The translations under genes were made by a program, and so were the position numbers. 64,000 nucleotides of DNA from Perna viridis (taxonomy: Eukaryota), in contig CM074519.1 of NCBI GenBank assembly GCA_037379345.1, positions 32,018,103-32,082,102 on the forward strand, read 5' to 3'. The notes beneath the pieces were generated by a model. The model saw only the letters and a list, made by a program, of their open reading frames with translations, did not search any database and had not been told where the DNA came from. Shown here piece after piece: positions 11,256 through 37,800 of this stretch (position 1 is its first letter; the number at the start of each line of letters is the position of its first letter).

Positions 11256-13726
11256 ATGTCGAATAATTGGTTTGATGAAGCAATGACGCTAGAAAAAAGT
11301 GATAACATAAACAATCGAAAATTCAAAGGGAAAAACTATTATGAAAATTCTCTCCCTTCTCGACGAAATATTTTTAAACAGAGAGGACGTAACATAAAGG
11401 AACTTGACAATGGTTATGATGAAGATGATGAAGATGACGATGATGCAGACGATTTTGTCGGTAGAGGGCGTGTTAAGATACCACGTGTTCAAACTTCAGA
11501 TGGACCTGAAGGCTGTAGTTGCTATCCGAAACGCAGCGATAAAAATCTTCCTTCCATGCTGTATGAAGGATTACAGTGTAAGCATACTGGACTTAAAGGG
11601 GAAACCCACGCTGGCGTGGCAAAGTTCTCCGGAAACTGGAAAGAGGAATATGAGGAAGCAGATCCAGAAAGCACAATGCCTCAAAAGACTAGCTACATTC
11701 TTGGTTACCCAAAACCAATAAATTTAGATCCAGGTAATTCAGAAGGAGATGAAAATTATGCCAATTCGTACGAAAACCAATTTGAAGTGGACAAAGGCGG
11801 TTTTAAACACACATCCAAACGCAAACCTGCAAGTCAAAGCAGCAGAAAAAATGTCTCTCGGAAAAGTAAAAAAGACCACGGTAAACCAGACGATGTTACA
11901 CAAAAGACTAAAGAACCTAAACCGTTTGCAGGACTATTGGACGATATGGAAGAGGATGATGAAGAACCAGAAAGACCTGTTGCCAAACCAATATTAGAAG
12001 GTATAACTTTACCTCAAATCGGTTTCACACCGCCATCCACACCATCGCGAGATAAGTTGCGTTCTCATGACCGACAGTCAGCCAGGTCTGCAACGCGCTC
12101 ATTACCACCATTGCCCGAAAGTCCCTTTTTATCGAACCGGGACGAAAATTCCAAAACACGTAGACACAGCATTATACAGGAAGATGATTATTCTACTGAT
12201 GATGACGATATAGGTGGCGATGGGTACAGGAGAAAGCAGAAACATTCAAATATTGCAGAACGGGAATTTATTGGGCATTATTACGACGCAGGTAAGTTAA
12301 TTTGCCTTGTCTTCTCTGTTCTCTATCTACTATCGAGGGCAAATCCATGGAAAACGATAACGGGGACACGAAATGGACAATTGTTTAAGAAACCAATCTA
12401 CAAATAAAAGAAATAAAAGGTACTCACAAAAAGAAAAACGGACATCACTAGGGTTTACTAGAATCAGGTAACTCGGATGAAGTGCAATTATTGATTCTTG
12501 CAAGACACACAAAATATTGCTTGTTGTCTGGTCATTTGCCACAGTGGAAACGGACACTCCACATCGACAAATCAGGTCGTAATATTTTTTACAATCTTAA
12601 TTTGTTGGCAAAAATCTTTTTCCCATCTTTGTAAGATGCTGATCCCCCATCTAGACAATCAGTGTAACAGTCACGATCGCAATACGACTATTTAGAGATA
12701 GGCAGATGATAAAATTTGGGAAATTAACATCATATATACAATGAAAACTGGAATTCAAGGACTGTATAATTTTTTCCTTCTGACGACTGGTTTTGGATGA
12801 AAATTCTCTGACACTAGTGAAAATAAAGCAGCAGAAAGAAGCACACAATTTGTTCCAATCGTGTTGCCTGTTGAAACACTACACCAAGTTATAACATACA
12901 GTTTATCATCGGATAACGGACTCGGCACAAGTCAAAGTGTTCGTTTATAGTTTGGGATCTCTTTGATTAATCAAATCTTTTGTCATGAAATAGATGTAAT
13001 AATATCTGCCAGTTTCCATTAAACTACATTCCATCAACAACAAAAACTTCCACTTAAAGTATTCTTGATCTCTGGATAAAATCTCTGGATAAAATTTTGC
13101 TCTACAAAACTAATAGTTTATGAAACAAAATATAAAAAGAACATGAACATGTAGAGGTTCATCTACTTGACGTAGTGAGAAGATTGGTGATCTGAATCGA
13201 AGCAAAGCAATACGTTAGTTGCTAGACGAGTTTCCAAAATGTATTTGTTTTATTCCTACATTGATAAACATTGCACTAAACCAGGCATTATACACATTTA
13301 AACTAGACATTATATAGAATGAATATACAGATAAAAGGATGTACTGAAATAATGAAACATAAAAATACTCATAACATCGATCATTTTGATTTGCAACTAT
13401 GTAACTATTTTCAAAGCCGCACTTGATTATTATTTTTTTTTTTAATTTTAGCGAACAAACGAACAAGGAGCTATGAAATAATACCAAAGTTTCGGAAAGG
13501 ACTTGAGGAATGGAACGCTTACATTAACGATAGCAACCGACAAAACCAAATGATATCTGGCCTACAAGGCCGAAGGACTACGAATGGTAACTTTTATACA
13601 CGGGGAAATTCAGCAGTATTAGAGGACGACGAATATGATGCAGACGAAACTGATTACGAAGACGACCCTAAAAAAACAACAAAACAACCACCCATAAAAG
13701 GAAAATGGCAGAAATTTAAAAAATAA
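11256..13726 (+). CDS. Uncharacterised ~436-aa protein, largely disordered and acidic/basic, with CxCYP..LPSM..CxH and REFxGxYxD motifs. Exons 11256-12291 and 13452-13726
   Basis: 1036-nt open exon ending at GCAG|GTAAGT. A T-rich acceptor TTTTAG at 13451 gives an in-phase second exon (ANKRTRSYEIIPKFRKGLEEW...GKWQKFKK*). AATAAA at 14137-14142 is followed by a GT-rich tract. Motif homology to 35667-36694. Confidence 0.85.
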
Positions 13727-15988
13727 CAACACCGGTCGTTGTTATTTAATCCCTCTCTGGTATTTCACAGAATATTTTCAGTTATCTTTGTCATGGAAAG
13801 CTAAGCAAAAGGTCATCATTTTACAAATCGGCTTGGCGTTTTGTCTAAAATAACGAAAAGGTATATCATAAACGTTAAACAAAAAGGAAATGAGGTTGCT
13901 TGCTCATAGTTTGTATTATTTTCAAGGAACATCACAATCATGCTCAAAATTTGTTTCCATGTATTACAGAGTATGAAGCAACCATATGATTTTGATAAAA
14001 AGGTGCTTATTACTCCCATTCATACCGACAAGAGGACCACTTCATAAAACGTTTCAAAATAAAAGACATTCAGAAGTAGCTACACTTATGAACCATCTTT
14101 CGAACATTATAGGCAAGCTACTTTGACTGTAAAAGCAATAAAATAGTAAAATGAAGTTTTTGTTTGTTTTGTTTATGTGATGTGTAAACTTTTACTTCTG
14201 ACCTGTATTTTTTTGAAAGGGCCAATGTAACTCGTTGAAGTCATGTATGATTGCTAACATACATTTTTTATTATCATACTTTCTTTTGTGTTTCTCTTTT
14301 GCTGATCATAACCTAAATCATATAACATGTATAAACGTCTACCAATTATTTACACATTTATCCAAACATAATTCATGTGTCTTTTTGGGTTCTTATATAC
14401 AAACAAATCAATCTTGGAGAGGAGGAAGACCTTTAATTATTTATCGGTCTTTAAAATATGTTATAAAACACATGAAAAAAATATTTTGCAATAGTCTTGT
14501 GTAATGTACAATGATACTACTATCTTTAACTGGTGCAGAACTGTGGAAAATGAATAATAGGACTTCAATCTCCTATTATATAAATAATGAAAATGTGCAT
14601 TTAACGGTTTATTCACATATTCCGAACATAATTCATGTCTTTTTAGGTTCTTATATACACACAAATTTGCTCAGTCTTGGAGAGGAGGAAAACGTAGTTG
14701 TTAGTTTAAAAAAAAAATGAAATAGCGTTAGGGATAATAGTGAAAATATCTAAAATGTTGAAACTTGAGCAAAGGTTTCCCTTCGTACAACATTCAGACA
14801 CTTCAAATTTAGTCTCGTTGACTTTGACAACATTGATTTATAATGGATATATAGATTGTAAATGTTGGTATATAACCGGTGTTGAGATTCATCTTAATTT
14901 GTTGAACGATTTTCATGTATTGGAAAGTGGAGAATGATGAGTAACCAAATTTCGTAAACGATATCTCAACTGAATATAACAAATCGCACAACTTCGGTTT
15001 TGGGTCTCAACAACCTAACTATAATCAAGATTTTGATATAAAAAATTATCAATATCATTGCTTAATCGATTAGAACGTTAATATGTTTTCTGGCGTTGTG
15101 GATTTCACAAATCATGTTGTTTAACGCATACATCATTACTAAGTTTTACACCGGTTTAAGACAATTGACTTGTATATTCGTCTATTTTCACACTTCTGCT
15201 ATAAAAGTCTTTCCGTCGATCATGAAATAGATATTCAACTTTTCAGCGGCGGTAATCTGGTTGAAAGATGATATATCGTCAAAATACAAAGCCATAATAG
15301 ACATAAGAGGGAAGTAATTATTCTTTTCTCATATATGGTACTCTTAACGTTGTGTAACACGTGTTATGCTGTCTATATTACATGTGTATATTTGTTGAAT
15401 ACAAAAAAAATCAATCATATATCAAAGAATATATTGCAAATTACTGAAATTATAAGGAATAAGGCGAACGGAGTCAATTCACTTTTCTTGCTACTAGACT
15501 ACAAGTTAGCTCTTAAAATCCTTTATCTTTGGAACAATAAAAGTCGTATTCGATAAATTAAGGTAATGACATGGCGTCTTGGTAGAAAGGTCTATGTCAT
15601 CACTCCACAGTAGTTTAGTTTCGCATTTTTGGCTAGGGGTGAAACATGACATAAATGGAAACCGTTGGTTGCTATAGTGATTAAAAATGAAGAATCTATT
15701 GTTGATAAAACATTTTCTGTAAAAATGAGACTTTTAAAAGTATTTTGCAATGTTTTATATATTTTCAACGTTGAAAGGGCTTTTTTCAATGACAATTTGA
15801 CTTCATTGTGAATGTGAAAGTAAGTAAATTTTTAACCATGCTAAATTTGATAAGTGGATTACAAAGTCAAATAGATCAAAATCTAACCGGCGATGCCCAT
15901 ATGAGGATGGGGTTTTCGAAGGAGAAAGTTTGGGCAGATTCAGGGGATGAAATAAAAATTTAAGATGTTTTGCGGAAAATTTGATATT

Positions 15989-18758
15989 TTGAAAATGTCT
16001 ACGATTTACAGGATTTGCCTTTACGCCTATACGCAAATTTAAAAAAAATGCTCCGTGCATTTTTTTCTATATTAAAAACGGTAATAGTATCTAAAGTTTA
16101 ATAATTTGATTTCAGATATAGCACGCTTTCTGATTGGATACAGAAATTGTCCATCATCTTATATACCAAATGTTGTTTTGTGACAAAAAATGAATGATAA
16201 GGAAAGACTGTATATATTATTTCGGTCTGTTTGAAATAATCTCAAATTCATTCAATTTTTGTAGTCATTCCTTGCCCCAACGATGCACCTGGTCCATCCT
16301 CATAGTTTTTAGTGGAATCCGTGTTGCTCATTGGCTTGTGTTACTTTTTATGTATTATTTAGGTGCTTTATGTTCTTTGTTGTGTTTGTCTGTTTTTCAT
16401 GCCTGGTGTTTGTTCTTGGATTACATTCTTTTGATTTACGCGTGAATCTTGGTTCCCTTGATTACGTTTAAAGAAACCTTTTCGATTTCTGAGATTTTTT
16501 AAATGAAAATGACAAAAATAGCGGAAATTAATTTTACAAAGGAATTTAACTGAAGAGTCTGACTGAATTTGTTTCGATGTGAATAATTTTTAAAGTTCGA
16601 TTTTATTTCTCACACTGATTGATTTAAACTGTTACCAAACTAAACTTATTAATTCGTGTTCCAACGTTGGTTTCCTACCATTTTAGCCAATTATCATTGA
16701 CCTTTTGATAATGTGCACATGTTAATTCTAGTGGGATTTCTGTCAGCTTTTTAGATAGGTATCGATATGTAGAACACTCGTAAAGATATTCATACTCATC
16801 TATTGATATATAAATGTGCTCTGTATATAAATAATATGTTATATTAAAATATAATCAACGTATTCGAAAACAACGTTATTGTATTGTAATGCATTAGTAC
16901 TAGGTGTGCTTTCCTATTTCAATACTCTTGACCTCATCTAGTTCGTGTATACAATTTACATTTATATTTAAGTCATTCGATCGATTTATTTGGTTCTAGT
17001 GCTGCTGCTGATATGTAACTAACTGAATACATAGTACAGCATGCCAAAATTTGCAATTTTATTTAGTATTATTGTATTTATAGAAAGTCACAGATAGACA
17101 TATTATAATGAGTAGATCTAGATCTGTGTTTTGGGTACTGAATTAAAAACATGTTCTGAAAATAAGAACAATATTAGAGAAGCCTGTGTTGGTTAACATA
17201 TGTCACAATGCACTACGTAATTACACATTTGTTTTTTTTTAAGAATTCCAAGGGTCATTCTAAATATTATATTAATCTTAACTTCGGGGTAGTATCAAAA
17301 ACTGAATTCATTCGACAGGAACGGGACGAGTTAACATGATATCAATAGCAATCCAGATGCAATTTCGCTGTTTACAGGCATTCGCCAATTTTCAAGCTCA
17401 TTATTCAGGCAAACTGTATGCTGCTATATGTTTGGTACCAGACGGATGAAAATGCATTCTTAGGGACATTAATCTTATAGTTAACAATGAACAGCATGAC
17501 CGACAAATTGAATTATAGACCAATTTTAACTCATTATTTATATTAACACAGGCTTCTCAAAAATATTGTTCTTTTCAGAATATTTTTTTAAATTCAGTAT
17601 CCAAAACACAGATCTACACAAAATAATATGTTATATACGACTTTCTATAAATACAATGATACTAAAAAGAATATTGCAAATTTTGGCATGCTGTACTATG
17701 TGCTCAGTTAGTTACATAACAGGAGCAGCATGACTTAAATTAAAATGTAAATTGTATACAAGAATTAGATGAGGTCAAAAATATCGAAATAGGAAACCAC
17801 ACATTATATTACAATACAATAAATAAAAAGTTTTTTTTTCGAATACGCTGATTTTATTTTAATATAATGTATTATTTATATACAGAGCACATTTATATAT
17901 CAATAGGTAAGCATAAATATCTTTACAAGTGTTCTACATATCGATACCTATCTAAAAAGCTGACAAAAATCCCACTAGAATTAACATGTGCACATTATCA
18001 AAGGTCAATGATAATTGGCTAATTTGATAGGAAACCAATGTTGGAAACGAATTTATAAGTTGTTTAGTTAATGTTTGGTAACAGTTTAAACCAATCAGTA
18101 AACGTGAGAAAAATAAAATCGAAATTTCAAACTTTAAAAATAAATTTAGTCAGACTCTTCAATAAAATTGCTTTGTAAAATTGATTTCCGCCATTTTTGT
18201 CACTTTCATTTCGTTAAAAAATCTCAGAAATCGAAAATGTATTCTTAAGAGGAATCAAGCGAAACAAGATTCCAGCGTAAATCAAATGAATGTAATTCAG
18301 GAACAAAGACCAGACATGGAAAACAGACAAACACAACAAAGAACATAAAACACCTAAAACAATACATACTAAGTAACACGAGCCAATGAGCAACACGGAC
18401 TGCACTAAAAACTGGGGTCATGGACCAGGTGCATCGTTGGGGTAAGGAATGACAACAAAAATTTAATGAATTTGAGGTTATTTCAAATAGACTGAAACAA
18501 TATAGCAGTCTTTCCTTGTCATTCAATTTTTGTATCAAAATTCAACTAATAAAGGTTGACGACGTCAGTCACATAACAAATTTGATATATAAGATGATGG
18601 ACAATTTTTGTATCCAAAAAGAAAGCGCGCTACATGTGAAAGCAATTTATTAGACTTTAGATACTATTATCGTTTTTGATATAGAAAAAAATTCACGGAG
18701 CATTTTTTTTTGCGTACAGGCGTAAAGGCAAATCCTATAAATCGTAAACATTTTCAAA
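15989..18758. repeat. Large diverged inverted repeat: arms ~15989-17197 and ~17542-18758, spacer ~345 bp
   Basis: For example GGATTTGCCTTTACGCCT (~16011) pairs with AGGCGTAAAGGCAAATCC (~18718), and GAGAAGCCTGTGTT (~17177) with AACACAGGCTTCTC (~17545). An additional outer match links ~15568-15598 and ~19057-19086. Confidence 0.9.
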
Positions 18759-19099
18759 GTCTGCTATAGACCCTTTTGTATTAAGTTGGTGAGTTTGCTC
18801 AATATACACTTCTGCGAGGTAAGGCTTGTTAGAACAGAAGATTCGCGGAAGTGTTTATGGAGCTTGCTGCTTATTGACTATCCCACAGTTAGCACAAAGA
18901 CTTCTGTTTGGAAATGAACGATACTTTTTTTGGAATGAATTGCGTACAGAATAAATAATGAAATAGAATGACAAGTACATTTATTAACTCTATGTCTTGT
19001 TTTATTTATTTCCCGGAAGAGCAAATAACGAGCAACAATGCTTGCCCAATCAATACACATAGACCTTTCTACTAAGACGCCATGTAATTATTTTAATGT

Positions 19100-22000
19100 A
19101 TTTGGTCTTTTTTGCAAATGTAGACAAATAATGGCGGCCAAGTTAAAATGTTTTAAACTTATCCATAAATTTAACATAAAAGGGTGTACCCTGCTCTAAG
19201 ATTATTCTAATTAAAACAAACTAAGTTTTGTATAATAAAATTGATAGGGCCTATATTTCTTCATGAATGTATCTTAACAGATGCACGTGTGGAGTAAATC
19301 AGAAGTTTATACCAGAAGCGGTCTTTTAACAGAAATTAATAAATTGAGAAGTAAAATTTCTGTACACGTGATATTAGAATAATTGATCCACTTTTCTTTA
19401 GTCCTTTTGTCTGTGAACCACAGCTGATACTGATTTAAAAAAAAAGTTTTTATGATAAACCGATATAAACAGGTAGATCAAATTTCATTTTTATACGTCT
19501 TTCGCGCATTATTTCGGCTTAGATAATTTGTCTTTTTCGGGCAAAGCCACTTTTTGACATACATTGGAAGATGCAACATATAAACCAAGAATAACATGTT
19601 GTGACAGAGGGATTAAGAACTTAAATATAATTAAAGATGAGAAACCATTAATTGTGATTACAGTAAAATGCATTGAATATGTTTAAATTTAAAGTAAAGT
19701 TTCAAAAATATTACTACTAGGTTATCATTTTTGTTAAGGAATGTTTCTTAATTTTGAAATAGCTTTTGCAGAAAGTCGGGCTTTAATCAACACCCTTTCA
19801 GAAAGTCGCTCATTGATTATTCTTAGGGACGTACGTTATTATACTGTCTTCATCGTCTTTTTGTCCTTCAGTTTTTGTATTTTTGTTTATGACTCTAGTC
19901 TCTACTTTCATTCTACTTCGTTCACAATTCCATACTAGTAATTAATTGCCGAGACGATTAAAAGTGTCCGGTTCTGGTTATCTAAAGAGGAAAATATATA
20001 TTTCATCCATGTTCCGATCGACGGAAAACGTTCGAAACGTTCAAAAAGTAAACATTGAATAAATCGTCCTCTTAAATATATTAAATAAAGTAAACAGTGA
20101 TCACAATTAATGGTTTATCTTGTTTCATGTTTTTTCAATCATTAATCCTTTTGTCATAACATGAAAAGCTTGGTTTGTTTGTTGCATCACCAAATATATA
20201 TCAAAAATTGGCTTCGCTCGAAAACATTATCTAAGCCGAAATAATATGAGAAAGACGTATACAGGTGAAATTTGATCTAAAGTGCAAGCAATTTTTTCAG
20301 TAGATTTCAAACCTGTTAATATCATATAAGTACATTTTTTATTCAGTATCAGCTGTGGTTCACACACAATAGGACTAAACACATGTGGACCAATAATTCT
20401 AATTTCACGTGTTCAGGGATTGTTACTTCTCAATTAATCTTAATGCTGTGACTATTTATCCATGAGTTTACGCCACACATATAAAGAAATAAATACTAGT
20501 GATCGACTGTTGCCTTCTCGACGTGATCTTACGGTTAATCTGCAATATTTGTTGACGTCACTTTCTTCAAACGTTTTTATTTGTTGCCTGTGACGTCACG
20601 CACGCTATTGCGACCGCGTTGAAATAAAACACCTATCTGAACTGCAAATGACTATTGTAAAACAATTACAATTGTGAATATGTGAAAGCTGTATGTGAAT
20701 GCTGTATACTGTTGGAATCAGGACAGAATGATCCTTCTAATATTTTATAAGCATTGAAACTTTAAAATTTAAATGAAAAAAAAAATTCCACTATACACCC
20801 GGAACTTGCTGAACCTTTACCTGAATATGCCTCAAGTGTACATGTAATAAGGTGTTTGAAACTTTTTTTATTTTTTATAGCTGTGGCTAAGTTACATTGT
20901 AAAAGCTGTAAAACATTGATTTTATTTCCTTTCAAGAAAATATGGTGAATGAAACTAACAATTTTCATCCCCCAAACACAGTCGCGCGATCCTCGCGATC
21001 GAAGCAATCCCCCGTTTATCATTTGGACGAAGTGTGTTCAGTGTAGGTAAGAGTTAATTAATATTCATATTCAAGGTTATATTCCACGCTGTGGTGCACA
21101 TGCATGTGCACATTTCATATAGCAATGATTATCAGATTAATTATTCTTTTCGATTTTCTAAAAAATGTTTAAGCTGTTTCAAATAATTTAAAATATAAAC
21201 CTACCAATCATATAATTATTGCTTATTTCGCTATACTGAATACACGTTTCAAGGATCGAGCATACATATAATTCCCCTTTAACGCAGAAACGAAAAGTGT
21301 TGCCAACATTGAGAGATAAATTGTCGAATTCCGACGTTACCGTACATGTTGCAATAGCGTGTGTAACGTCTGTGTCATGGGAAATGAAAATTTTAACAAT
21401 TTCTCTTGTATTTTACATTGAACTGTTTAATGACTATCATTATTCTACAATAATTGTTATTTGATTTGTAATGTGTGTAGCAAAACTTATGATTAGTTGG
21501 ATGTAACAATTAAATTAAAAGCAATGTTTATAATATTGAACTGATTATACGAAATAATCTTTATTATCAAATAAACTAAATAACAACCAATGGTCAATTC
21601 TTTTTCCCATGACCTTTGACACACAATGATGATTTTGGTCTATCTGATTTTTGTCATATCTTCCAATACCTGTCGAATATTGGCCCAAAAATGAAACATT
21701 AACTAAGTCGAAATAATGCACGGAAGACGTATACAGGTGAAGTTTTATCATGTCGGCATTTTTTCTTTAGATTTTAAACCTGTCTATATCGGTTTCTCTT
21801 ATGTATTTTTTTAAAATCATTATCAGCCGTGGTCAACATAAGATAGAACTAAGAAAAAAAGGGACAAAATAATTCTAATTACACTTGAATAAAAATTTCT
21901 ACTTCTAATTTAATCTTAATGCTATGACTCTCTAGGCACGAGTTATTTTAATGGACCGCTCCTAAGATAAACTTCGGACTTACTCCACACATCTTTTAAG

Positions 22001-23730: not shown

Positions 23731-23736
23731 TTGGAA

Positions 23737-25090: not shown

Positions 25091-25112
25091 AACCACGCCT
25101 TTTCTGGTCTTT

Positions 25113-26009: not shown

Positions 26010-26199
26010 ATTAATATTTTCATGTCCTCTGTTTACGGCATTTCCTTTATGGCAAATATTTTCTTCTACACCTTCGTTTTGCATCATAAGAAATAACATT
26101 ACTCTGTTAAATGTTGTTGCCTTATTCTTCTTAATTTCAGCCAACATGATTTGAATTACAGTTTCCGCAAAATGTGGATTCCTTTTCTTACTACTCATG
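26010..26199 (-). pseudogene. Decayed Myb/SANT-like (Harbinger accessory protein-type) coding remnant
   Basis: MSSKKRNPHFAETVIQIMLAEIKKNK...EENICHKGNAVNRG fits the KKRxxNFsxxExxxLxxev..W.eI..kvNav pattern. It adjoins TTAAGA-rich repeats (25740-25925) like those of Harbinger-type MITE subterminal regions. Confidence 0.5.
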
Positions 26200-26576
26200 A
26201 TTCGTACAGCAAAGTGGGAATTAAAGGTAATCATATCGAGTTTTATTTTCGTAGTACATGTATGACCTGTTTTTCCAACTTCCCAATTTTTACCTTGATA
26301 TTGCCATTTTAATACGGACTTTTCTATTGACTATTGCCCAGAGTTTATCAGTACGGTAATTAGTTATCCTTTTGGAACGCAATAATCAAATGAAGAACAT
26401 ACTAATATGGTTTAATGAGTAACCTCGAATTGATAACTGTGCAAATGTGATTGGTCGCAGAAACCGCATAACTTCCTAGTTAACAATAGTAAAGAGGTGT
26501 TTTGCCTTTAATCGGACACATTATTTTCATTTCACACTAATTTTGACTACAAGTACTCATAAGTACGTGTATACTG

Positions 26577-26874
26577 CAGGGCCCGTTCCAGTAAATTTGA
26601 AAAGTAGGGATGCCAGCCGAGGTTCCTCAGAGAAGGAGGGGTGTCAGCCAAGGTTCCTCAAAAATGGAGGGGTGCCAGCCGAGGTTCCTCAGAAAAGGAG
26701 GGTTGCCAGCCGATATTCCTCAGGAAAGAAAGGGTGCCAGTCGAGGTTCCTCAGAAAAGGAGGTGCAAGGATATTATTTGCCATTATTTGTCAATTTTAC
26801 ACGTGAAAAAGGCAAATTTTCCAATAAAAATGGGAGTACAACCCGACTGCATTCCTTTGAGGATATACCACTGT
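26577..26874 (+). mobile_element. MITE-like element containing ~4.5 copies of a ~33-35-bp unit; related element at 63552-63716
   Basis: Unit GGGGTGCCAGCCGAGGTTCCTCAGAAAAGGA. The downstream ATTATTTG..AATTTTACAC block is shared with 63624-63653. Confidence 0.65.
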
Positions 26875-27600
26875 ATTGAGTATATTCCCGGATACTATTG
26901 AACTAGACACATGATACGATACTATTATTAAAGATTATAATCAAGCATTTGTTTACTTCCTCCAGATAAAAAAAATCTATACCACAAAGAATGCATGGCA
27001 AAGACAACTATTAACAAGAAATAGCAAGCAACGAAGACTTTTGTAAGCTCTTTTATAAACCACGAGTAAAGGAGAAAATTGATATCCCATTCAGTAAGGA
27101 AATCTACCACCATTTTCCTTTCAAATAAAAAAAAATGCTTTTGATATTAGGAAATGTCTAATATTTCTTCAACAATTATAAGTATACAAATCTCATCTTT
27201 GAGTCTTTATTCAAAAATGGAGCAATAAAGTCTGTATTCATTTTATCAACTAAGTGTAATTTCCCTTTGTATAGAAAAAGAAATTTTAACGTTGGACATG
27301 AAAAGAGATATTTAAAGGTTTTGTAAGTGATAGTCCTATTTTGTTTTGATTGTCCATTGAAGCATACAGAAATTTAAAATTTTACATTCTATACATATGT
27401 AATAAATTCATTGAAGAGTCATCTCGTGTATGTTTACTTATTAATGTTTTACAACGGTTATAATACTTCGTGTATAGGACGATGTTGAAGAGTACCACAT
27501 AAAGCTCTGTCGAAAGGTAAGAAACAGTATAATATGTAATGTAAGTAAGGGTTTTTTTTGCATTGGTTGTTTGTACATGTAAATCTGTTGTAAAAGTTAA

Positions 27601-27663
27601 CAAACATTACACAACATGACAAACATTACACAACATGACTAACATTACACAACATGACTAACA
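27601..27663. repeat. 20-bp tandem repeat x3
   Basis: (C/T)AACATTACACAACATGAC repeated. Confidence 0.9.
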
Positions 27664-27677
27664 AGTCTTATTGTTTG

Positions 27678-28990
27678 AATGATATGTGTGTCAGTCCTTC
27701 CGTTCATCGATGGTTACCAATGATTTGTGTGTCAGTCCTTCCGTTCATCGATGGTTACTAATGATTTGTGTGTCAGTCCTTCCGTTCATCGATGGTTACT
27801 AATGATATGTGTGTCAGTCCTTCCGTTCATCGATGGTTACCAATGATTTGTGTGTCAGTCCTTCCGTTCATCGATGGTTACCAATGATTTGTATGCAATT
27901 CATTCTGTTCATCGATTGTTACCAATGATTTGTGTGTTAGTCCTTCCGTTCATCGATGGTTACTAATGATTTGTATGCAATTCATTCTGTTCATCGATTG
28001 TTACCAACGATTTGTGTGTAATTCCTTCCGTTTATCGATGGTTACCAATGATTTGTGTGTTAGTCCTTCCGTTCATAGATGGTTACCAATGATTTGTGTG
28101 TTAGTCCTTCCGTTCATCGATGATTCCTAATGATTTGTATGCAATTCATTCTGTTCATCGATTGTTACCAATGATTTGTGTGTTAGTCCTTCCGTTCATC
28201 GATGGTTACTAATGATTTGTATGCAATTCATTCTGTTCATCGATTGTTACCAATGATTTGTGTGTAATTCCTTCCGTTTATCGATGGTTACCAATGATAT
28301 GTGTGTAATTCCTTCCGTTCATGGATGGTTACCAATGATTTGTGTGTTAGTCCTTCCGTTCATCGATGGTTACCAATGATTTGTGTGTAATTCATTCTGT
28401 TCATCGATTGTTACCAATGATGTGTGTGTAATTCCTTCCGTTCATAGATGGTTACCAATGATTTGCGTGTTAGTCCTTCCGTTTATCGATGGTTACCAAT
28501 GATATGTGTGTAATTCCTTCCGTTCATAGATGGTTACCAATGATTTGTGTGTAATTCCTTCCGTTCATAGATAGTTACCAATGATTTGTGTGTTAGTCCT
28601 TCCGTTCATCGATGGTTACTAATGATTTGTGTGTAACTCCTTCCGTTCATGGATGGTTACCAATGATTTGTGTGTAATTCCTTCCGTTCATAGATGGTTA
28701 CCAATGATTTGTGTGTAATTCCTTCCGTTCATCGATGGTTACCAATAATTTGTGTGTTAGTCCTTCCGTTCATCGATGGTTACCAATGATTTGTGTGTTA
28801 GTCCTTCCGTTCATCGATGGTTACCAATGATTTGTGTGTTAGTCCTTCCGTTCATTGATGGTTACCAATAATTTGTGTATGCGTCTTTCCGTTTATCGAT
28901 GGTTACCAATGATTTGTGTGTTAGTCCTTCCGTTCATCGATGGTTACCAATGATTTGTGTGCTAGTCCTTCCGTTCATCGATGGTTACCA
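27678..28990. repeat. 41-bp minisatellite, ~32 copies, several unit variants
   Basis: Consensus AATGATTTGTGTGTTAGTCCTTCCGTTCATCGATGGTTACC with exact 41-bp periodicity (27678, 27719, 27760...) and no spacers. Confidence 0.97.
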
Positions 28991-29257
28991 TTACATGTAT
29001 ATATGTTAAACTTTAATATGTCTATGTTACATTTTAGTTGGAGATGCAAGTCTGGCGTAATTATCTTGATTATTATACATATTTTAAAAAGAGGTGGGTT
29101 CCAGAATAAAAGGGGGAGGCCCAAGGTATCATTTGTTTATTTAAGACATTTGTGTGCGTGAAATTAACTAAACCCCACCCAAAAAAAAAAAAATTAAAAA
29201 AAGGGGAGTCCAACCCCTGGAATCTTCCCTGCTCGATCCGCCTATGTAAAACAGTAT

Positions 29258-29611
29258 TTAGGTCTCTAAAAAAAAGCTTCTACATTCATTAAGAAAAGTG
29301 GTGCTCTTTTGAAACTGAAAACAGTTATCAACATCCTTCACAGATAGGGGTGGGATATCACTTGATTCTAATATTTTCCAATCAGATTTTATTGAGCTAA
29401 TGTTCAGTTCTGTAAATGTGTTTTTCACATAGTCGTCACAATCAGATTCTACACCAGAAGTCAAATGTATATATACCCGGTTCACAAGTATATCTTTTGC
29501 TCCACCTATTTTCAAATCTCATGCTCTGAGCCATTCTTTCAAATCTTTCACCTTCCAACTTCCAAGTTCCTGGACAGAAGGGTGGCACTCTATATCAGAA
29601 TCACTTGACAT
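29258..29611 (-). pseudogene. SAP-domain-containing coding remnant, probably transposon-derived
   Basis: Acceptor TTCCAG|ATG, then ..LGSWKVKDLKEWLRA*DLKIGGAKDILVNRV.. (SAP motif with an internal TGA at 29519-29521), continuing in frame to W..IPPLSVKDVDNCF. Truncated next to a ..GATCCGCCTATG MITE end (~29245). Confidence 0.65.
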
Positions 29612-31993
29612 CTGGAATAGATAAGGAAATAGTAAATAGCTTTCAAGTTGTCTCAGCCTTAAAACACCTTGGATATAGTATTTGTCATCCCTCTTATACC
29701 TCAGCAATTTTTATCATATTAATTGAAATACAAAATAGGTGTATGGAGGAGGTGACTTGCTCCGGATACAAACCTGTAGAAAGTAGATATTTATAACAAC
29801 ATAAGGCTACGAAAATAAACAGAGCAAGGTCCCTCAGCCCCTATTACCCTAATCCCTCAAAGTATTATTTAAACTGATGTCTTCTTGTCCTTGTTTCCAT
29901 TTGACGATTTATCGCACTCGGCAATCTGTTCAGACTGAGGTAGTCACGAATGTTACGTCTACCAAATTTGTTATTTTTGCAAAAAAAAAAAAAAACAACC
30001 CAAAAAGAACAATTAATATTACACAGAGTTTCGATAAGCAATGGTACAAATATGGTGTGTATTTCTACTTACCACGAAAAGTTACTACTGAGCCTAAACT
30101 GAAGCTATTCTTTTGGGATTCTGCTACAGTTTCACATCATCGACAGTCATCTTAACTGATCTGAACTCCCCGGAAGTTACTATTGGTGCATAAGTAACTG
30201 CCGGTACAAACTCGGAAAAGCATCCGGAAAAAACATTGCGGAACAGATCTATTGTCAATGCACGCTTTAAATATTTTATGTTGTTAACTGGTTAATGTAA
30301 GCAATAGAATTCAGTCATAACTGAATCAAAAACAAAATACTAGAACAATGTCAAAGCTGATTATTTTATGGAGTCTGTTTATACAAGTTTCTATATATTT
30401 TGAACAAAATACAAACGTCAGTGACCAACTTCATTATTGAAAGTAATTTTACGAGACTTCATTTACATTTATTCTGAAAATAAGTTATAATAAAAAGGAG
30501 CACGAACAATTAACATTTATTTACTTCTCTAAACCAAACAATAGTGTCAATTCAAATTAAAGTTTGTAACAGTATTTAAAATGTATTTTAAGGTAGTTTT
30601 AATTTGTATTTTATGGCTATTTCCCTAGGATAATTTTAGCAAGTAATTCAGTTTAAATGATTTTGTTTTGTTACAACTAAGACATCTACCACTTTTATTT
30701 CTAAAATTCAATTAACAAATCATTTCTAAAGACTAGTGTGCAACTCAATGGAATGCTGTTTTAAGAGCTGGAGTCGATCCCAGTAAAACTCCCCTAAAAT
30801 GAAAATTGAAGCTAGATACTAAAACATAGTCATGGTTATACAAAGAACATAAAAAAGAATATATATTACATCATTGTTTGTTACCCTTACATATGTGCTA
30901 TTTAATTCTTTGTCATTTAGATGCTTTGAATTTGTGGCTTTTTCGCATTATTAACTTCTTGTGGCTCCATCCACCACAAGAAATAATAGGCGTAATACCA
31001 CTATTTCATGTCCCCATTACTTTCTGTATTATGTTCAGCTATTTATATATATTTAAGACTCATTTCACATTAGTACATATGGTGCTGTAGGGGTTTCATT
31101 CTGATGGGCATCCCATGAAAATATCAACATACCTTATGTGCCGTCTAAGAAAGAACGGTGATTAAAAGTGAAAGTAGACAGGTGCAGAAATCACTACTTT
31201 CATTTTGAAATTTAGCTATCTTTTTGTTCAGAATTTATTAACCCTATACTGAAAAAAGAAAATGAAGATTTTAGAATACTGCTGATTCATCGAGCTTTCG
31301 GATGACACCCAGTTTGTATACCTCTACTAAACTAAGAGAATAATAGGGTGCAATAATTGGACTATTTCCTTTCATTCTAAACTACTTTCTTGCGCAGGCT
31401 ACTGGTTCCTGGAATAGTGGTATTACACCAATAAAATTAGACCGGAAGCGTTATTATCTTCCCCTGAGTAGCCCACGTCATATCCTGTAAACGAAAAAGG
31501 GAGATTATAGGGGAGATCGTACTGTTTTCTGTATGTTGTTTTCCTTTAGATTTTGCACATTGTTTGTTCTTTGTGATGTCTGAAATTTTCTCTGCTACAC
31601 CTTTGTTCAGTGAATGATAGTTTTGTACCATATGAACGATACTTTCTCCTTTGGTTCAGCTGTCAAGTGGACTGATACCCAATGTGGGCACAATGGTGAC
31701 ACATTAGAACAGATACATGGTAAAGTAAATATGCAGATATTTTGGTACAGCAATGATTCGTTGTGGAATACGTTTAATTAATTTTAATGGGGCTTTCGAC
31801 AATCGGTTTTTCTTCATAGCCTTGTAGATTTAGTTTAAGCAACATTAATATAGTTTATTGGATTTTATCTTGTCAGTTCAAATTTTGTCTCTATTATATC
31901 GGTTACTTCTTTTCGAAATGTTTTAAAATTTAGCAATCCGTTTCCACCTCCTGAGTCAATTCCCCATTGCATATTGCCGCATTCCGCATTCCA

Positions 31994-32262
31994 TTTAGAA
32001 GAGTTCCGGTTCTCCAAATAATAAACACCCCCCCCCCCCCAAAAAAAAAAAACAAAAAAAAAACAACCAGATTCCCCTTAAAAGAGTTCCCTTCTCCATA
32101 TAAAAAAACACATTCCCCTTAGAAGAGTTCCCGTTCCCTATATAAAAAAAAATTCCTTTACAAGAGTTTCCGTTCTCCAAATAACAAAAACATTCCCCTT
32201 AGAAGAGTTCCCGTTCTCCATATAAAAACACATTCCCCTTTGAAGAGTTCCCGTTCTTCAAA
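31994..32262. repeat. ~40-bp tandem repeat, about 5-6 copies
   Basis: ATTCCCCTTAGAAGAGTTCCCGTTCTCCA(A/T)ATAAAAAAC units with A-run length variation. Confidence 0.85.
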
Positions 32263-34887
32263 TAAAATAAAATAATATTTGCGGTACGTAAGTTTTGAGC
32301 TATTTTAGTTGCAGTCTGATATCGTCTATCTGTTTAGCTGAACTTGAAATTATTTATGTGCTAGTAGATGCTGGTAAAAATTTCCATCACATAGGACTGT
32401 TTTTGAAATTTGGTTTGAAGCTTCGAATTCGTGCCATTGAGTTGAATATTGTTAGTAATATTTGGTTGCTTCCCGATATCAACTTCCTGTTTAGCGGAGT
32501 AGATGTATACATATTACGAGAACGCATGTATTTTTATGATTATCATATATTTGACGTTAAATGTCTTGATTTCGGTTGAGTTTTATCGATTTGAAAAGAT
32601 CCGCGGTTTAAATGCTAGTACCGGTTTTTATTTCAACAAAGGTTGTGAGTGACATTATGGTCTCTGAATTTTTTTTAGGTTTTTTCGTGAATGTGACGGA
32701 AGGCGCTGCTGGAACAGGACAATATTACCCTTCCGGCGCACCTGTGATGTCACTTCCAGTTTTTTGTGGGAGTTCATAATGCTGGTGCTTTAGCTTTTGT
32801 GCGAGGTTTTGTTTTCCTTATCCTGTGTTTTTATATGTAACAGAATATTCTACTCTGTTCTCTACATTGTGTATGTGTTCACGTTCAGTGCGTCATTTCA
32901 CAAAGCTTACGCGAGACTTACGTGCACGTCTAAATGGTTTGTTAAGGATTTGTGTGTACGCAAATCTGATGAGTGCTTTGTGAATCGATGTCCTGGTCAT
33001 ATACTTAGATATTGTTAATGATTCGGTATTTCTTTCCGAGCATATTGTATTCTAAAGAGTTGTAAATATTTTCCTGGTGATTTGTGTCTTCTTGTAGCTT
33101 CACTTGTAAGTCGGAGATAAATATTTTTTTAAACTTCGTGTTTCATTGTTCCTTTTCTTTGAAATAATCAAAATTAAAAAAGGTCATCCTCTGTTTCAGA
33201 TGAACTTTAGATGATATTCTTTAAAACAGACAAAAAGTGAAACATTAATTTAACATATACTGAATAATTGAAGTATAATTGTGGTTATATGTATGAACGA
33301 ATCTGTAAAACAGATATTTGGTTAGGCTTTGAATTTATGTATTATGTAACATGGCGCATAGATGTATTTAATCTAATGAAACGTATTTCTTTGAAGAATT
33401 TTGTTCTGGTTTTAACCGTTTTACAGAACGCTAATGTTAAAAATGTTTATCAAGTAGTTGGTAAGTCTTGGGTTGCCAGTAATGTGGTGTTTTGAATCGA
33501 ATAACAAAATTATGGCATAATGTTAGAATGCATATCAGAATTACATAAATATAACGGTAGCGACAAAGCCAATGTTGTTAAATAGATTGATTCAGATATT
33601 GTATTACTTTCCTAATTGTCCAAGACGTATTTTACGAATACGCTGCGACGGCGCAACGATTTTTACTAAGATTGGCAAAATAAAATAAAGCCGATATAAA
33701 GACCTAGCTTTAATGAGCTTACTACCCGTATCAACATATGTATAATCTGTAGGCACATACAGTGCATAACAAAAACAAATAACATCGACAGTTATACATA
33801 GTATACATCCACTGTTCTAATCAGAAAAAAAAACCATTCGTGACCGAATAACGTAAGCGTTCTTTAATACAATGACGTCACAGCTTACGCGCGATTTAAT
33901 GTTTGTGTAATTCGACCACTGGCTGTTCTGTAGTAAGGCAATACACTCCTTTGGTACTATAGACGTGGAAGTTTTCGAGGCAAAATAATTTCTTATGCAA
34001 AATTAAATGGTTAGACGAAGAAATTATTCCCTTTCCCGATTTCTTTATGTAATGCATAGTTACGTCATAATTATTCATTTAAATATTTTCTTCAAAAAGA
34101 AATTTGAAGCAATGCATTATTACCACAGAATTGTGAGTGAAACTGAACAAACCACTAATTACTTAACTGAAAGCGTTTTTAATCAAGAATTTCCACATCT
34201 ATAGCCTTAAACTTTTACAAAACATTCATAACGATATTTTTGAGTCACAGTTGCAATGAGTATGTTACAAGTCTTACGGGGCTTGGGACTCCTCCTAAAA
34301 GATAACAGTTTGGCAGTGAAATTCATGAGCATAATATTTATAAAATTAAAAATATTGTTAACAATAATGACAATAAATAAACACAAAATATGTACAGTGT
34401 CCAATTTACATGGCAACAGCGTAGATTTAAACAATTAATACGATGGTCCGATTTTACACATTAGTATACATTTGTAGATAACTATAAAAACGGCATAGAT
34501 TCTGTCAATTGGATCTACCTTTTTAAAGAGAACTATTTCGTTCAGTTCACTTTTTCAGAGACAAAATAGCACTATAAGTAGGTACATTGTAACAGGTTTA
34601 TCTATTTTATCACATAAGGTCACAACCTCTTCCCATCATTCCTAGTTTGACGAATGTATACTTCCTCTAATGAGCAAGGGCGATAATCGTTCAAATTGCA
34701 ACAAGTGATGAGTTGTCAAACGGAACGTCCAATTGCGTAGATATATAACGTCATTTCCTTCGGAGTCTAATACCGAAAGGACGTGAGCAGTTTCTTTTTC
34801 TCGTTTGTGTTGGTTGACTAGTAAAGACTAGTTTTAATATCAGAAAAATATTTGCGATGATAGAGAAATTTCATCAAGTGCAATAGT

Positions 34888-37800
34888 TCAGACGTGATTA
34901 TTGTTCATAACGTCTACAGCGGGCATAATCATCATTTCGACGAATTTCAGTGATGAGTGAGTATGAATGGTATTCCACTGAATACCATTTCTGCGAAAGA
35001 AGTCATTATGCTCGCCCTCTTTGTAGTATCGCCCATTAAGATTTGATTCAAAGCAGTCTGAATACCACCACCCACCACGATAATGTACTGCGCAATTATT
35101 TATAGATCGTCTATCGTTGTCACGGTCGAACGTGCTAAATTCCATTCCGTTGTGGTCGTCGCGTATCGTTGTCATTGAGTCACCTGCGTTGCCATGGTAA
35201 CGCGAGATATGCAGACGATAATTCTCCCTCTCGCTTTCTATCCTGAAACTGTCATATATTGCGTAGTATTTGTTCCCGTTCCATTCTTCCATATCAATTC
35301 GTAGTTTGTAGCTACCTGAAAAACCAACAAAATTGTAAATTCGTTATCAGCACTAAAGTCAGTCCCCTAAAAGACCAACGGCAAACACTATTTAAAGAAA
35401 AATTAATCATACTAGTGTATCAAAGCTTATGAATGGCTTCATTCAGATTGTAAAGTATCAATAGATAAATTGTTAAAGCAAGTCTTTTGAAAACAACTCA
35501 TGTAAACAATTTGTACACGATGTACATTAAACAGGGACAATAGATATAACTTTCTATACTAAAACGCAACCTACATTTAAAGATTTTATAATTAAAATCT
35601 AACAGGATATGTAGTAAACTCGATTTCTATTCTTTTGAAGGAAGGAATGGTCTTTAGAATAAACCAATGTCAGCGCGAAGATACCCAATCCAGAGGAAAG
35701 GGCCTCCTAGGGTAGAAGTTAATGTACTTAAAGTTGACGCAGACGGAAACAGTATTTATGATGAGGATTTTGACCCGAATTTCTGTCACTGCTATCCGCA
35801 AACAAGTAGCAAAAGACTGCCTTCTATGATTTACGATGAGCTAAAGTGTGATCATGAACAGTCTACGTATATTCAACCAGCTCAAAAATCTGTGTTTACT
35901 TATCCCTGGACTGCCAACACAGTAGCTGGAAGGGAGGAATTATTTGACGACAGAGATTCCCTAAAAAGCGGTAAATTAAGTGTCATTGCGGAAGAAGCTG
36001 ATGTTCACGTGACAAGAACAGCGCCGCCATTTGCAAGCCCAACAAAAACAAACGAAAGAACGAGAGTACCATATTCCGCTCCTATAGACCCAAGTCGTTG
36101 GGAGAGTCATGGACCAGATTTTAGGAGGGCACATTCGGAGAACCGACTTTACACAGGAGGTAGACCAAGGACTTTAGATTCAAGGGAATTTCAAGGAAAA
36201 TACGTCGACCCAAGTAAGTGTATAATTGAGAATAACTTCATACATTAATTCATGTTTATGCGTTTACTTTATAGCAGATTTTGGACTTTTTTGTTTTGAT
36301 TTTAAGTGTAGTGTATTAATAAATTATCTGTATTATGGAATAGTGCAAATGAACTCAGACCTAAGAAAACAAGTGTCTCAATACTACTTACTGGTCGTTT
36401 ATCTTCATGTATCAAAGTGAACAAGGACAGCCTTTAAAAGCTACCTAACTAGTTAGTCTTTTATTAAAGTAGGGAGTACACGATATGATTGGAGCAAAAC
36501 AATGAAATAATATTTTAAGTACAATTATGTGAAAGTTGTAACATCTCTTCGTTAACTCAAAATAATGTTTTCCTTTGTTCCATTTAGAGGATGGTCAAGT
36601 GTACAAATTTAATGTCAACTATGGAAAGAAGAATGTAAGAGCTTTCAGAGAAGCGGACAACACAATAAGAGCATCCCCTAATGAGTTCAGATGACCTGCA
36701 TTGTCTGCAAAGGGAAAAGTTGACTAAGAAACACTAAAGGGGACAGATGGTGTCTTTGATATGTAACTCATTGCAGCATTACAACATGTGCTCAATTCCA
36801 TATATCTATGATGTTCATTTTAACATGAAAATCTTTTTTTATCTTTTCCAACTTCCGATAATATTGAGATTTCTTGTATAGGAAGTACGTTTTTAAATAA
36901 CTTGAAGTTTGTTTGCACCATATAGAAGATTCTAATAAATGTCTAACTTAGAACTTGTATAGTGAATCTTTGCGCCCAAGGGTATGTTAAACATTTCTTT
37001 TCCAACTACATACAACTTTTCAATTACTTACCTTGAGTAGTTAGTTGATGGATATGATTGTTGCCTAACCAGAATTCGCCATTCTGATCCCCAAAGCCAT
37101 GTTTATAATCATGCCAACTTCTGTAAAAGTCAACGGATCCGTCCTGCCTGCGCTGGAACACTGTCCAACCTGAAAGTTATAGAAAAAGTGTTAAAACTAC
37201 AATCATGGACATTAACGCGTAATCAAAAGTCTTTATAGAACGCAGATTATGTCTTGGGTAAACATACAACTAAAAGCTTTTGAAATGATACGTCTGTAGT
37301 ACTCTAACTTTAATTTTCATCAGCTCATTATTAAATGGTAGTTCAATGTGTGCTAAAAGCTAGAGCGTCGTCCAACAATTGTGAATTGTATTAGGTTTGA
37401 TCCGGATACAAAACTTACCTGTTCCGTTAACGACTTTGCACAACACTTTGAAAGGTTTCTTGGCCTTGTCCGGTTTAATTTTGATGTAGTAATCACCTTC
37501 GTATTTCATTCCTCCAGATTTGTGAACCTCGTCACAATCTGAAACACAAGAATTAGAAACATTAGAGTCATCGCCCTTTGAACAACCATTTCGCGATACA
37601 TCATAAAATCGGAAAAAGCTAGCGATTATGCCAAACATAATAATTAAAAAAATATATTTGTACTTGGGCATAAATGAATAATTCTGGAAAAAATTAAAAC
37701 AGGTACTTACATCAAGGAGTCGATAATTATTTTCAAACGAGATTGCCGATGATAATAGGTATTTATACATTTTCGTCGCATTAGATTATTAAAAAGACCG

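What the first reader, a model, noticed from the sequence alone, without database searches (positions are those of the whole stretch)
11256..36694. Unrecognised two-member protein family with a putative C-x-C-x18-C-x-H metal-binding motif and a second conserved motif split by a shared intron
Seen in sequence: CSCYPKRSDKNLPSMLYEGLQCKH (11514-11585) versus [24 protein letters not shown] (35784-35855) share 14/24 identities, including all three Cys and the His. REFIGHYYDA|ANKRTRSYEI versus [10 protein letters not shown]|[10 protein letters not shown] carry a phase-1 intron at exactly the same codon. The sequence between the motifs cannot be aligned, looks disordered, and differs about two-fold in length (~225 vs ~110 aa). 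No signal peptide is evident. Inference: conservation restricted to two short islands points to an old duplication under selection, possibly a small Zn-binding module plus a beta-hairpin interaction motif joined by a flexible linker. I cannot assign it to a known domain.
Basis: partly seen in the sequence, partly recalled or inferred. Interest (0 to 1): 0.85.

Follow-up and report, generated by a model that had tools for sequence, protein, structure and literature searches.

The report
Undescribed mollusc–annelid Cys3His protein family
The two genes are real, spliced and strongly conserved members of an unnamed protein family found in molluscs and annelids: the proteins are mostly disordered, with an invariant Cys-x-Cys…Cys-x-His signature and a small C-terminal beta-sheet, and their function is unknown.

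Summary
Gene A (11256-12291 + 13452-13726) and gene B (35667-36213 + 36588-36694) share the C-x-C-[FY]-P…C-x-H island (BLASTP E 2e-9). Both have a phase-1 intron after R-x-F-x-G-x-Y-x-D.

- **Splicing:** the A junction is in spliced contigs of three studies. The B junction matches a relative's cDNA contig exactly.
- **Copy number:** they are the only two copies in this 723-Mb genome, so this is not a transposon.
- **Family size:** a profile search finds 55 clusters, all "uncharacterized" or named by composition. Named hits are bivalves, gastropods and two annelids.
- **Signature:** 46 of 50 representatives keep it, 44 with x18 spacing. Three exceptions keep four Cys/His by shifted residues.
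- **Age:** the A/B duplication predates the bivalve-gastropod split. The intron is also in Capitella.
- **Known families:** no Pfam, PDB, ESM Atlas or literature match.
- **Structure:** AlphaFold2 on orthologues is confident only for the C-terminal ~40 residues, a three-stranded sheet split by the intron. The Cys module scores pLDDT 55-68 and the rest looks disordered.

Zinc binding is plausible but unproven. The "linker" holds further islands conserved within each orthologue group. Gene B lies antisense in the same fibrinogen-gene intron in five species, including abalone. Interest is moderate.

The parts
11256..12291 (+). Gene A, coding exon 1 (345 codons plus the first base of the split codon). 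The start codon is conserved with the Mytilus orthologues.
   Evidence: ORF and donor G|GTAAGT. Spliced contigs of three runs cover 11183/11264/11321 to the junction.
12292..13451 (+). Gene A intron, phase 1, GT..AG, 1160 bases.
   Evidence: A joint 12289->13450 (cut +2) appears in one contig of each of X5, X7 and X8 at depth 59-90, against 0-5 within the intron.
13452..13726 (+). Gene A, coding exon 2 including the stop codon. It holds strands 2 and 3 of the C-terminal sheet and an acidic/basic tail. The 3' UTR runs past 14000.
   Evidence: It matches the spliced Mytilus edulis and M. coruscus proteins P0014 and P0016.
11514..11585 (+). Gene A Cys3His signature, CSCYPKRSDKNLPSMLYEGLQCKH (aa 87-110).
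11607..11717 (+). Gene A islands specific to the A type: HAGVAKFSGNW (11607-11639) and GYPKP (11703-11717).
   Evidence: These columns are invariant in the A-type alignment; coordinates come.
12009..12128 (+). Gene A proline-rich islands: LPQIGFTPP (12009-12035) and SARSATRSLPPLPESPF (12078-12128).
12261..12291 (+). Gene A REFIGHYYDA, the first strand of the C-terminal sheet. It continues in exon 2 at about 13452-13531.
   Evidence: AF2 on the orthologue P0014 gives strands 334-340, 345-353 and 362-367 at pLDDT about 90.
35667..36213 (+). Gene B, coding exon 1 (182 codons plus one base).
   Evidence: It is 83% identical to Mytilus trossulus LOC134728341. The relative's cDNA contig L010 aligns to 35643-36213.
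36214..36587 (+). Gene B intron, phase 1, GT..AG, 374 bases.
   Evidence: In L010, query positions 696 and 697 abut at window 36213 and 36588.
36588..36694 (+). Gene B, coding exon 2 including the stop codon (K)[34 protein letters not shown]. It holds strands 2 and 3 of the sheet.
   Evidence: AF2 on the orthologue P0003 gives strands 177-183, 190-197 and 202-208 at pLDDT above 90.
35784..35855 (+). Gene B Cys3His signature, [24 protein letters not shown] (aa 40-63).
35871..36083 (+). Gene B islands specific to the B type: [15 protein letters not shown] (35871-35915), TRTAPPFA (36012-36035) and VPYSAP (36066-36083).
   Evidence: These columns are invariant in the B-type alignment; coordinates come.
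36183..36213 (+). Gene [11 protein letters not shown], the first strand of the C-terminal sheet.
34888..37176 (-). Host gene context. The last exon (34888-35292) and the penultimate exon (about 37030-37176) of a fibrinogen-domain gene lie on the opposite strand, and gene B sits inside the intron between them.
   Evidence: Pfam Fibrinogen_C E 5.8e-38. The same nesting is seen in M. trossulus, Pecten, Pinctada and Haliotis.

Best explanation
Genes A and B are the two paralogues, in this mytilid mussel genome, of an ancient and so far unnamed protein family of molluscs and annelids.

Shown here:
- Both genes are spliced as predicted.
- Both are under strong purifying selection.
- They are the only two copies in the genome.
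- The family signature C-x-C-[FY]-P-x2-S-x4-[IV]-P-S-M-x-Y-[DE]-x3-C-x-H and the C-terminal R-x-F-x-G-x-Y-x-D-P module are kept across more than 50 sequence clusters.
- The phase-1 intron inside that module is shared with an annelid.

Inferred:
- The proteins are cytosolic or nuclear and largely disordered. They act as adaptors that carry a string of short docking motifs.
- The Cys3His signature most likely chelates one Zn2+. This would staple a 24-residue loop into a shape recognised by a conserved partner, or clasp it to that partner.
- The C-terminal ~40 residues fold into an aromatic-rich three-stranded mini-sheet, comparable in size to a WW domain. This sheet would serve as a second binding or self-association surface, possibly for the proline-rich motifs that every member also carries.

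The cellular process served is unknown.
For: - **Gene models:** the A junction is seen in spliced contigs of three studies at depth 59-90 against 0-5 in the intron. The B junction is reproduced exactly by an intron-less contig of a relative.
- **Selection:** pN 0.09 and 0.19 against pS 0.70 and 0.74.
- **Copy number:** two in the genome.
- **Family breadth:** 55 clusters. Named members are Pecten, Tegillarca, Crassostrea, Pinctada, Potamilus, Mercenaria, Haliotis, Patella, Littorina, Elysia, Biomphalaria, Owenia and Capitella.
- **Duplication age:** the A and B clades each contain bivalves and gastropods, with the split supported 97/88.
- **Intron:** same position and phase in Capitella.
- **Signature:** 46 of 50 representatives carry it and 44 have x18 spacing. 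P0037 (CxxC), P0056 (HxC…CxxC) and P0059 keep four ligand-type residues by shifted Cys/His.
- **Disorder plus C-terminal sheet:** AF2 on P0003 and P0014.
- **Not a known family:** no Pfam, PDB or Atlas relative.
Against: - AF2 gives the Cys module only pLDDT 55-68, although it is the best-conserved segment. True zinc modules are usually modelled confidently.
- The non-ligand positions of the module are as invariant as the Cys/His, which fits a docking peptide as well as a metal site.
- No partner, tissue or subcellular location is known.
- The three-stranded sheet has no specific structural match (best Z 4.7).
- The complex predictor was unavailable, so self-association is untested.
Confidence: 0.6

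Rival explanations
1. The Cys/His signature is not a metal site. It is a linear docking motif, or a redox or lipid-modified segment, read by a conserved partner, and its Cys and His are contact or modified residues.
For: Twelve of the 24 positions, including P, S, P-S-M, Y and D/E, are as invariant as the Cys/His. AF2 does not fold the segment (pLDDT 55-68). The proteins are otherwise built from short conserved motifs in disorder.
Against: Four ligand-type residues with fixed x1/x18/x1 spacing occur in 44 of 50 representatives. The three divergent members that lose a canonical ligand gain a neighbouring Cys or His, which is the pattern expected for a metal site.
Confidence: 0.3
2. The family is a fast-evolving lophotrochozoan branch of a known metazoan family, for example a disordered ciliary, microtubule or chromatin-associated protein, whose relatives elsewhere are too diverged for HMMER to find.
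For: Disordered proteins with only short motifs lose detectable similarity quickly. A-type members carry acidic and lysine-rich tracts and aromatic/proline motifs. The transcript is abundant in several RNA-like assemblies.
Against: A profile search of 1.84 billion representatives returned no named member from outside the molluscs and annelids. Four profile searches against all PDB chain sequences gave only low-complexity hits. There is no Pfam hit in 33 members.
Confidence: 0.12
3. The similarity reflects a repeat, transposon ORF or decaying pseudogene pair rather than functional genes.
For: None beyond the initial lack of annotation.
Against: There are only two copies in 723 Mb. Transcripts are spliced. 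pN is far below pS. Orthologues keep synteny in five species.
Confidence: 0.01

Closest known systems
CSL-type zinc finger of DPH3/KTI11 (Pfam zf-CSL; pattern recalled from memory as C-x-C-x19-C-x2-C)
   Same: A C-x-C pair is followed about 18-19 residues later by a second ligand pair, and the module is small and cytosolic.
   Different: Here the second pair is C-x-H, not C-x2-C. No member matches the Pfam model. AF2 predicts no compact domain around the motif. The surrounding conserved residues (FP..S....PSM.YD) are unrelated.
Zinc clasp of the CD4/CD8 tails with Lck (C-x-C-P in a disordered tail pairing with C-x2-C of a partner; recalled from memory)
   Same: A C-x-C followed closely by Pro lies in a disordered segment, and a metal site could be completed between two chain segments or two proteins.
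   Different: This family carries all four candidate ligands in one chain. There is no sequence relationship and no membrane anchor. Nothing here tests intermolecular binding.
WW domain (Pfam PF00397)
   Same: Both are aromatic-rich, three-stranded antiparallel mini-sheets of about 35-40 residues. The D-G-x-V-Y-x-F-N turn and strand resemble the WW G-x-x-Y-x-x-N core. The same proteins carry PPLP-like and SPPP motifs, which are typical WW ligands.
   Different: No Pfam WW hit in 33 full-length members. The two signature Trp residues and the C-terminal Pro are absent (B type) or only partly present (A type has one Trp). The predicted strands are longer (6-9 residues). No WW domain appears in the rows listed by either fold search.
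[quoted passage not shown] 2020, PMC7441323: lophotrochin, trochin and 35 others)
   Same: Both show a motif strongly conserved in several spiralian phyla and undetectable outside them.
   Different: This family's motifs occur in none of the sequences of that paper's supplementary list, as far as that text is held. No expression pattern is known for it.

Membership tests
zf-CSL (DPH3/KTI11-type zinc finger) | Match to the Pfam profile | tested here: not met
   hmmscan of the four exon translations at E<=10 and of 33 family members at E<=0.1 found no zf-CSL hit.
zf-CSL (DPH3/KTI11-type zinc finger) | Four Cys ligands arranged C-x-C … C-x2-C | tested here: not met
   The family pattern is C-x-C-x18-C-x-H in 44 of 50 representatives.
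zf-CSL (DPH3/KTI11-type zinc finger) | Compact folded domain around the ligands | tested here: inconclusive
   AF2 gives pLDDT 55-68 with no regular secondary structure there. The metal was not modelled and the alignment has only 33-36 rows.
WW domain | Match to Pfam PF00397 | tested here: not met
   No WW hit in 33 full-length members.
WW domain | Two conserved Trp residues 20-22 residues apart and a conserved Pro after the second | tested here: not met
   The module alignment shows no conserved Trp in the B type, and a single Trp in the third strand of spliced A-type members.
WW domain | Three-stranded antiparallel sheet of about 35-40 residues | tested here: met
   AF2 strands 177-183/190-197/202-208 (P0003) and 334-340/345-353/362-367 (P0014) have pLDDT about 90.
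Structural zinc site (generic Cys3His) | Four ligand residues conserved with fixed spacing, and losses compensated by neighbouring Cys/His | tested here: met
   46 of 50 carry the full signature. P0037, P0056 and P0059 keep four Cys/His by shifts. Only P0066 lacks them.
Structural zinc site (generic Cys3His) | Actual metal binding, with the ligands clustered in space | not testable with these tools
   Model coordinates are not returned, no metal-aware prediction could be run (complex prediction unavailable), and biochemistry is needed.
Transposon or repeat-encoded ORF | Multiple dispersed copies in the genome | tested here: not met
   Only the two window genes match in the 723-Mb assembly.
Spiralian-specific motif genes of Wu et al. 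2020 | Presence in the published list of 37 oyster genes | tested here: not met
   The motif strings are absent from the held supplementary table, in which long entries are cut.
Spiralian-specific motif genes of Wu et al. 2020 | Motif conserved in several spiralian phyla and undetectable outside them | tested here: inconclusive
   Named hits are molluscs and annelids only. Other spiralian phyla and more sensitive outgroup searches were not tested.

The most novel reading that the evidence does not exclude
A previously unrecognised, spiralian-restricted protein family combines two elements: a new Cys3His zinc-stapled (or zinc-clasp) docking loop, and a WW-sized mini beta-sheet that binds the family's own proline motifs, giving a self-associating adaptor. 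One paralogue has stayed inside the same antisense intron of a fibrinogen-domain gene since before bivalves and gastropods diverged, which hints at obligatory co-regulation of host and nested gene.
Probability: 0.25. Interest if true: 0.6.

Novelty: new variant of a known kind. Interest (0 to 1): 0.4.

Why it matters
At the family level this is undescribed. There is no Pfam model, no solved relative and no paper. Every database entry is either "uncharacterized" or carries a misleading composition-based name, such as FK506-binding protein 3-like, glutamic acid-rich protein-like or zinc finger protein on ecdysone puffs-like.

Defining the family has three uses:
- It gives annotators a signature to replace those names.
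- It adds a gene family restricted, as far as seen, to molluscs and annelids, which is useful for work on lineage-specific genes.
- It provides a compact candidate metal-binding peptide of 24 residues that is easy to test.

The kind of thing is not unprecedented. Lineage-restricted disordered proteins with a short Cys/His signature are common, and the function is unknown. A specialist would find it useful rather than startling.

The deep conservation of gene B inside one intron of a fibrinogen-domain gene is the most unusual by-product.

Tried and rejected
- **Pfam:** scans of the four exon translations and of 33 members gave only sub-threshold noise.
- **PDB sequence searches:** profiles A1, A2, A4 and A5 hit only charged low-complexity stretches such as the HSP90 linker and eIF3j.
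- **ESM Atlas:** two look-ups gave no usable hit.
- **Fold searches:** Foldseek against PDB and VIA-align against 48,161 chains gave nothing specific with the B-type model. The best result was Z 4.7, with generic three-stranded sheets.
- **Second homologue search:** a search with the broad alignment added only one further oyster (Magallana gigas) protein and no new taxa, because the tool is word-limited.
- **Literature:** searches for locus names and motif strings returned zero papers.
- **Wu et al. 2020:** the list of spiralian-specific motif genes does not contain the motifs.
- **RNA run X24:** the raw RNA-seq run laid no reads on gene A, so it is no test.
- **Cluster oddity:** the 90% cluster of P0022 lists an NDUFB5 protein. 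BLASTP shows no similarity, so I treat it as a clustering or listing artefact.
- Exons were searched separately by reference, and full-length analyses used database orthologues (P0003, P0014 and others).
Full report
**1. The observation**

The peptides at 11514-11585 and 35784-35855 translate exactly as quoted. BLASTP of the two first exons aligns 45 residues around them at 40% identity, E 2e-9. It also finds REF-G-Y-D at both exon ends.

The donor sites are GCA G|GTAAGT at 12291 and CCA A|GTAAGT at 36213. The acceptors are TTTTAG| before 13452 and ATTTAG| before 36588. Both introns therefore interrupt the codon after ...Y-x-D-[AP] in phase 1. The window has no N.

Each exon was searched by reference, and all full-length work used database orthologues.

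**2. Are the genes real?**

*Gene A.*
- Contigs from three runs of three different studies each skip 12289→13450 (cut +2 gives GT..AG, i.e. 12291/13452).
- Their depth is 59-90, while the intron has depth 0-5.
- The contigs start at 11183-11321 and run past 14000, so there is a 3' UTR of more than 270 bases. Polyadenylation signals lie at 14058 and 14137.
- The one raw RNA run (X24) laid nothing and is no test.

*Gene B.*
- Three runs of a close relative (86% protein identity) hold an intron-less contig.
- That contig aligns to window 35643-36213 and then, without a gap in the contig, to 36588-36694. This is exactly the predicted junction.
- RefSeq's Mytilus trossulus LOC134728341 has the same spliced form.

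*Selection.*
- Non-synonymous differences are far below synonymous ones.
- B against M. trossulus: pN 0.087, pS 0.70.
- A against a relative: pN 0.19, pS 0.74.
- dS is saturated, so the ratios of about 0.05-0.07 are rough.

*Copy number.* A six-frame profile search of the whole 723-Mb assembly finds only these two loci. A repeat or transposon origin is excluded.

**3. How wide is the family?**

Direct searches found orthologues only in mytilids and Pinctada. Gene B is 83% identical to Mytilus, while gene A is only 45% identical. The host is therefore a mytilid outside Mytilus, and A evolves much faster than B.

A profile of both subfamilies searched against 1.84 billion representatives gave 55 clusters at E<=1e-3. 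Named members are:
- Bivalves: Pecten, Ylistrum, Tegillarca, Crassostrea/Magallana, Pinctada, Potamilus, Mercenaria.
- Gastropods: Haliotis, Patella, Littorina, Elysia, Biomphalaria.
- Annelids: Owenia, Capitella.

All are "uncharacterized" or carry composition-driven names. No cephalopod or non-lophotrochozoan name appeared. Unnamed Logan and ENA entries could belong to other phyla.

A maximum-likelihood tree separates a B clade from an A clade plus annelids (support 97/88). Both clades contain bivalves and gastropods in species-tree order. The duplication therefore predates the bivalve-gastropod split. The root is not known.

In Capitella the gene has GAC CCA G|GTTTGT … TTTTCAG|TG at the same codon and phase. 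Many genomic ORF calls across the family end "…Y-x-D-P-[GS]-K", which is the read-through of a |GTAAG donor. The intron is as old as the family.

**4. Anatomy**

Among 50 representatives that contain the core, 46 carry C-x-C-[FYCI]-P…[PSG]-S-M-x-Y-[DE]-x3-C-x-H, and 44 of these have exactly 18 residues between the pairs. The exceptions are informative:
- P0037 has C-P-M-C-P.
- P0056 has H-V-C-P … C-P-Q-C.
- P0059 has C-D-Y-H … C-P-H-C.
- So all three still offer four Cys/His.
- Only P0066, which is on a long branch, lacks them.

- A-type proteins keep K-x-P-R-V, H-x-G-V-x2-F-x3-W, G-Y-P-x-P, L-P-x-I-G-Y-S-P-P and S-L-P-P-L-P-E-S-P-F.
- B-type proteins keep P-R-[VI]-E, I-Q-P-A-Q-x2-V-F-x-Y-P-W-T-A, T-R-T-A-P-P-F-A and P-[FY]-[ST]-A-P.
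- A-type proteins also have acidic and lysine-rich tracts.
- Neither type has a signal peptide or a hydrophobic segment.

AlphaFold2 was run with 33-36-row alignments on P0003 (B type) and P0014 (A type). Mean pLDDT was 61 and 53.
- Only the last ~40 residues of the conserved part are confident (pLDDT about 90). They form three antiparallel strands: 177-183/190-197/202-208 in P0003 and 334-340/345-353/362-367 in P0014.
- The shared intron falls in the turn between strands 1 and 2.
- The Cys module scores 55-68, and the rest is below 60.

**5. Comparison with what is known**

No match was found in any resource:
- No Pfam family.
- No PDB sequence relative with four profiles.
- No ESM Atlas neighbour.
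- No specific fold match: Foldseek E>0.5, VIA best Z 4.7, generic sheets only.
- No paper.
- Not in the published list of spiralian-specific motif genes.

From memory, three things resemble parts of the proteins.
- The ligand spacing recalls the CSL zinc finger (C-x-C-x19-C-x2-C).
- The C-x-C-P context recalls the CD4/CD8-Lck zinc clasp.
- The mini-sheet recalls a WW domain in size and in its G-x-x-Y-x-x-N turn.

Each membership test that could be run failed, except "three-stranded sheet" for WW. These are analogies, not assignments.

**6. Mechanism**

*Shown:*
- The proteins are expressed.
- They are under constraint.
- They lack a signal peptide or any hydrophobic segment.
- They are predicted to be mostly disordered.
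- They carry an ordered series of invariant short motifs and one small predicted fold.

*Inferred:*
- They are adaptor-type proteins.
- The Cys3His set most likely binds one Zn2+ (my odds about 0.55). This rests on the fixed spacing and the compensated ligand changes. The low AF2 confidence and the equal invariance of non-ligand residues count against it.
- The aromatic-rich C-terminal sheet is a second interaction surface. It may bind the family's own PPLP/SPPP/APPF motifs, or it may self-pair.

The homodimer test could not be run. Which cellular process is served is unknown.

**7. Context**

Upstream of gene A (about 4000-6400, + strand) lie exons of a zf-HIT/PAPA-1 (INO80B-like) gene, as in Pecten and Pinctada.

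Gene B lies antisense between the last two exons of a Fibrinogen_C gene. The same nesting occurs in M. trossulus, Pecten, Pinctada and the gastropod Haliotis. In Haliotis the flanking exons align to the window's 34918-35322 and 37030-37176, so it is the homologous intron.

A and B are 24 kb apart here and about 35 kb apart in Pecten. They are 7-10 Mb apart on one chromosome in Pinctada and Haliotis.

**8. Verdict**

This is a real, ancient, undescribed family, and its description is useful for annotation. The function is unknown and the zinc claim is untested. The kind of finding, a lineage-restricted disordered protein with a Cys/His signature, is familiar. Interest is 0.4.

Noticed in passing
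window 34888-37176 (- strand host exons) around gene B 35667-36694; also L008, L004, L006, L013: Gene B sits antisense in the last intron of a fibrinogen-domain gene. The same nesting, in the homologous intron, is present in Mytilus trossulus, Pecten maximus, Pinctada imbricata and the gastropod Haliotis cracherodii, so the nested pair predates the bivalve-gastropod split.
   Followed up: yes
window about 4000-6410 (+ strand): Exons similar to a zf-HIT/PAPA-1 (INO80B-like) gene lie upstream of gene A in the same orientation. The same neighbour precedes the A-type gene in Pecten (L005) and Pinctada (L007), but no called gene lies within 10 kb upstream of it in Haliotis (L014).
   Followed up: partly
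window 46413-47159 (- strand): A 248-aa ORF gives only weak coiled-coil-type Pfam hits. It aligns to the upstream part of the Pinctada fibrinogen-domain gene (L006 19303-19636). It is probably the N-terminal coiled-coil exon of the host gene, which would then span at least 34.9-47.2 kb.
   Followed up: partly
gene A, window 13674 and 11498/11528/11693/13604/13725: All three spliced contigs carry a 3-base AAC insertion after 13674. It is in frame and adds one residue to the exon 2 tail. Run X8 shows five further single-base differences. These are ordinary allelic variation in the fast-evolving A gene.
   Followed up: no
protein cluster of P0022: The 90%-identity cluster of an oyster A-type protein lists a 224-aa NDUFB5 protein as a member. 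BLASTP shows no similarity, so this is a clustering or listing artefact, not biology.
   Followed up: yes
database names of family members: Automatic names given to members are driven by low-complexity composition and are misleading. Examples are FK506-binding protein 3-like, glutamic acid-rich protein-like, leucine-rich repeat extensin-like protein 1, micronuclear linker histone polyprotein-like and zinc finger protein on ecdysone puffs-like.
   Followed up: partly
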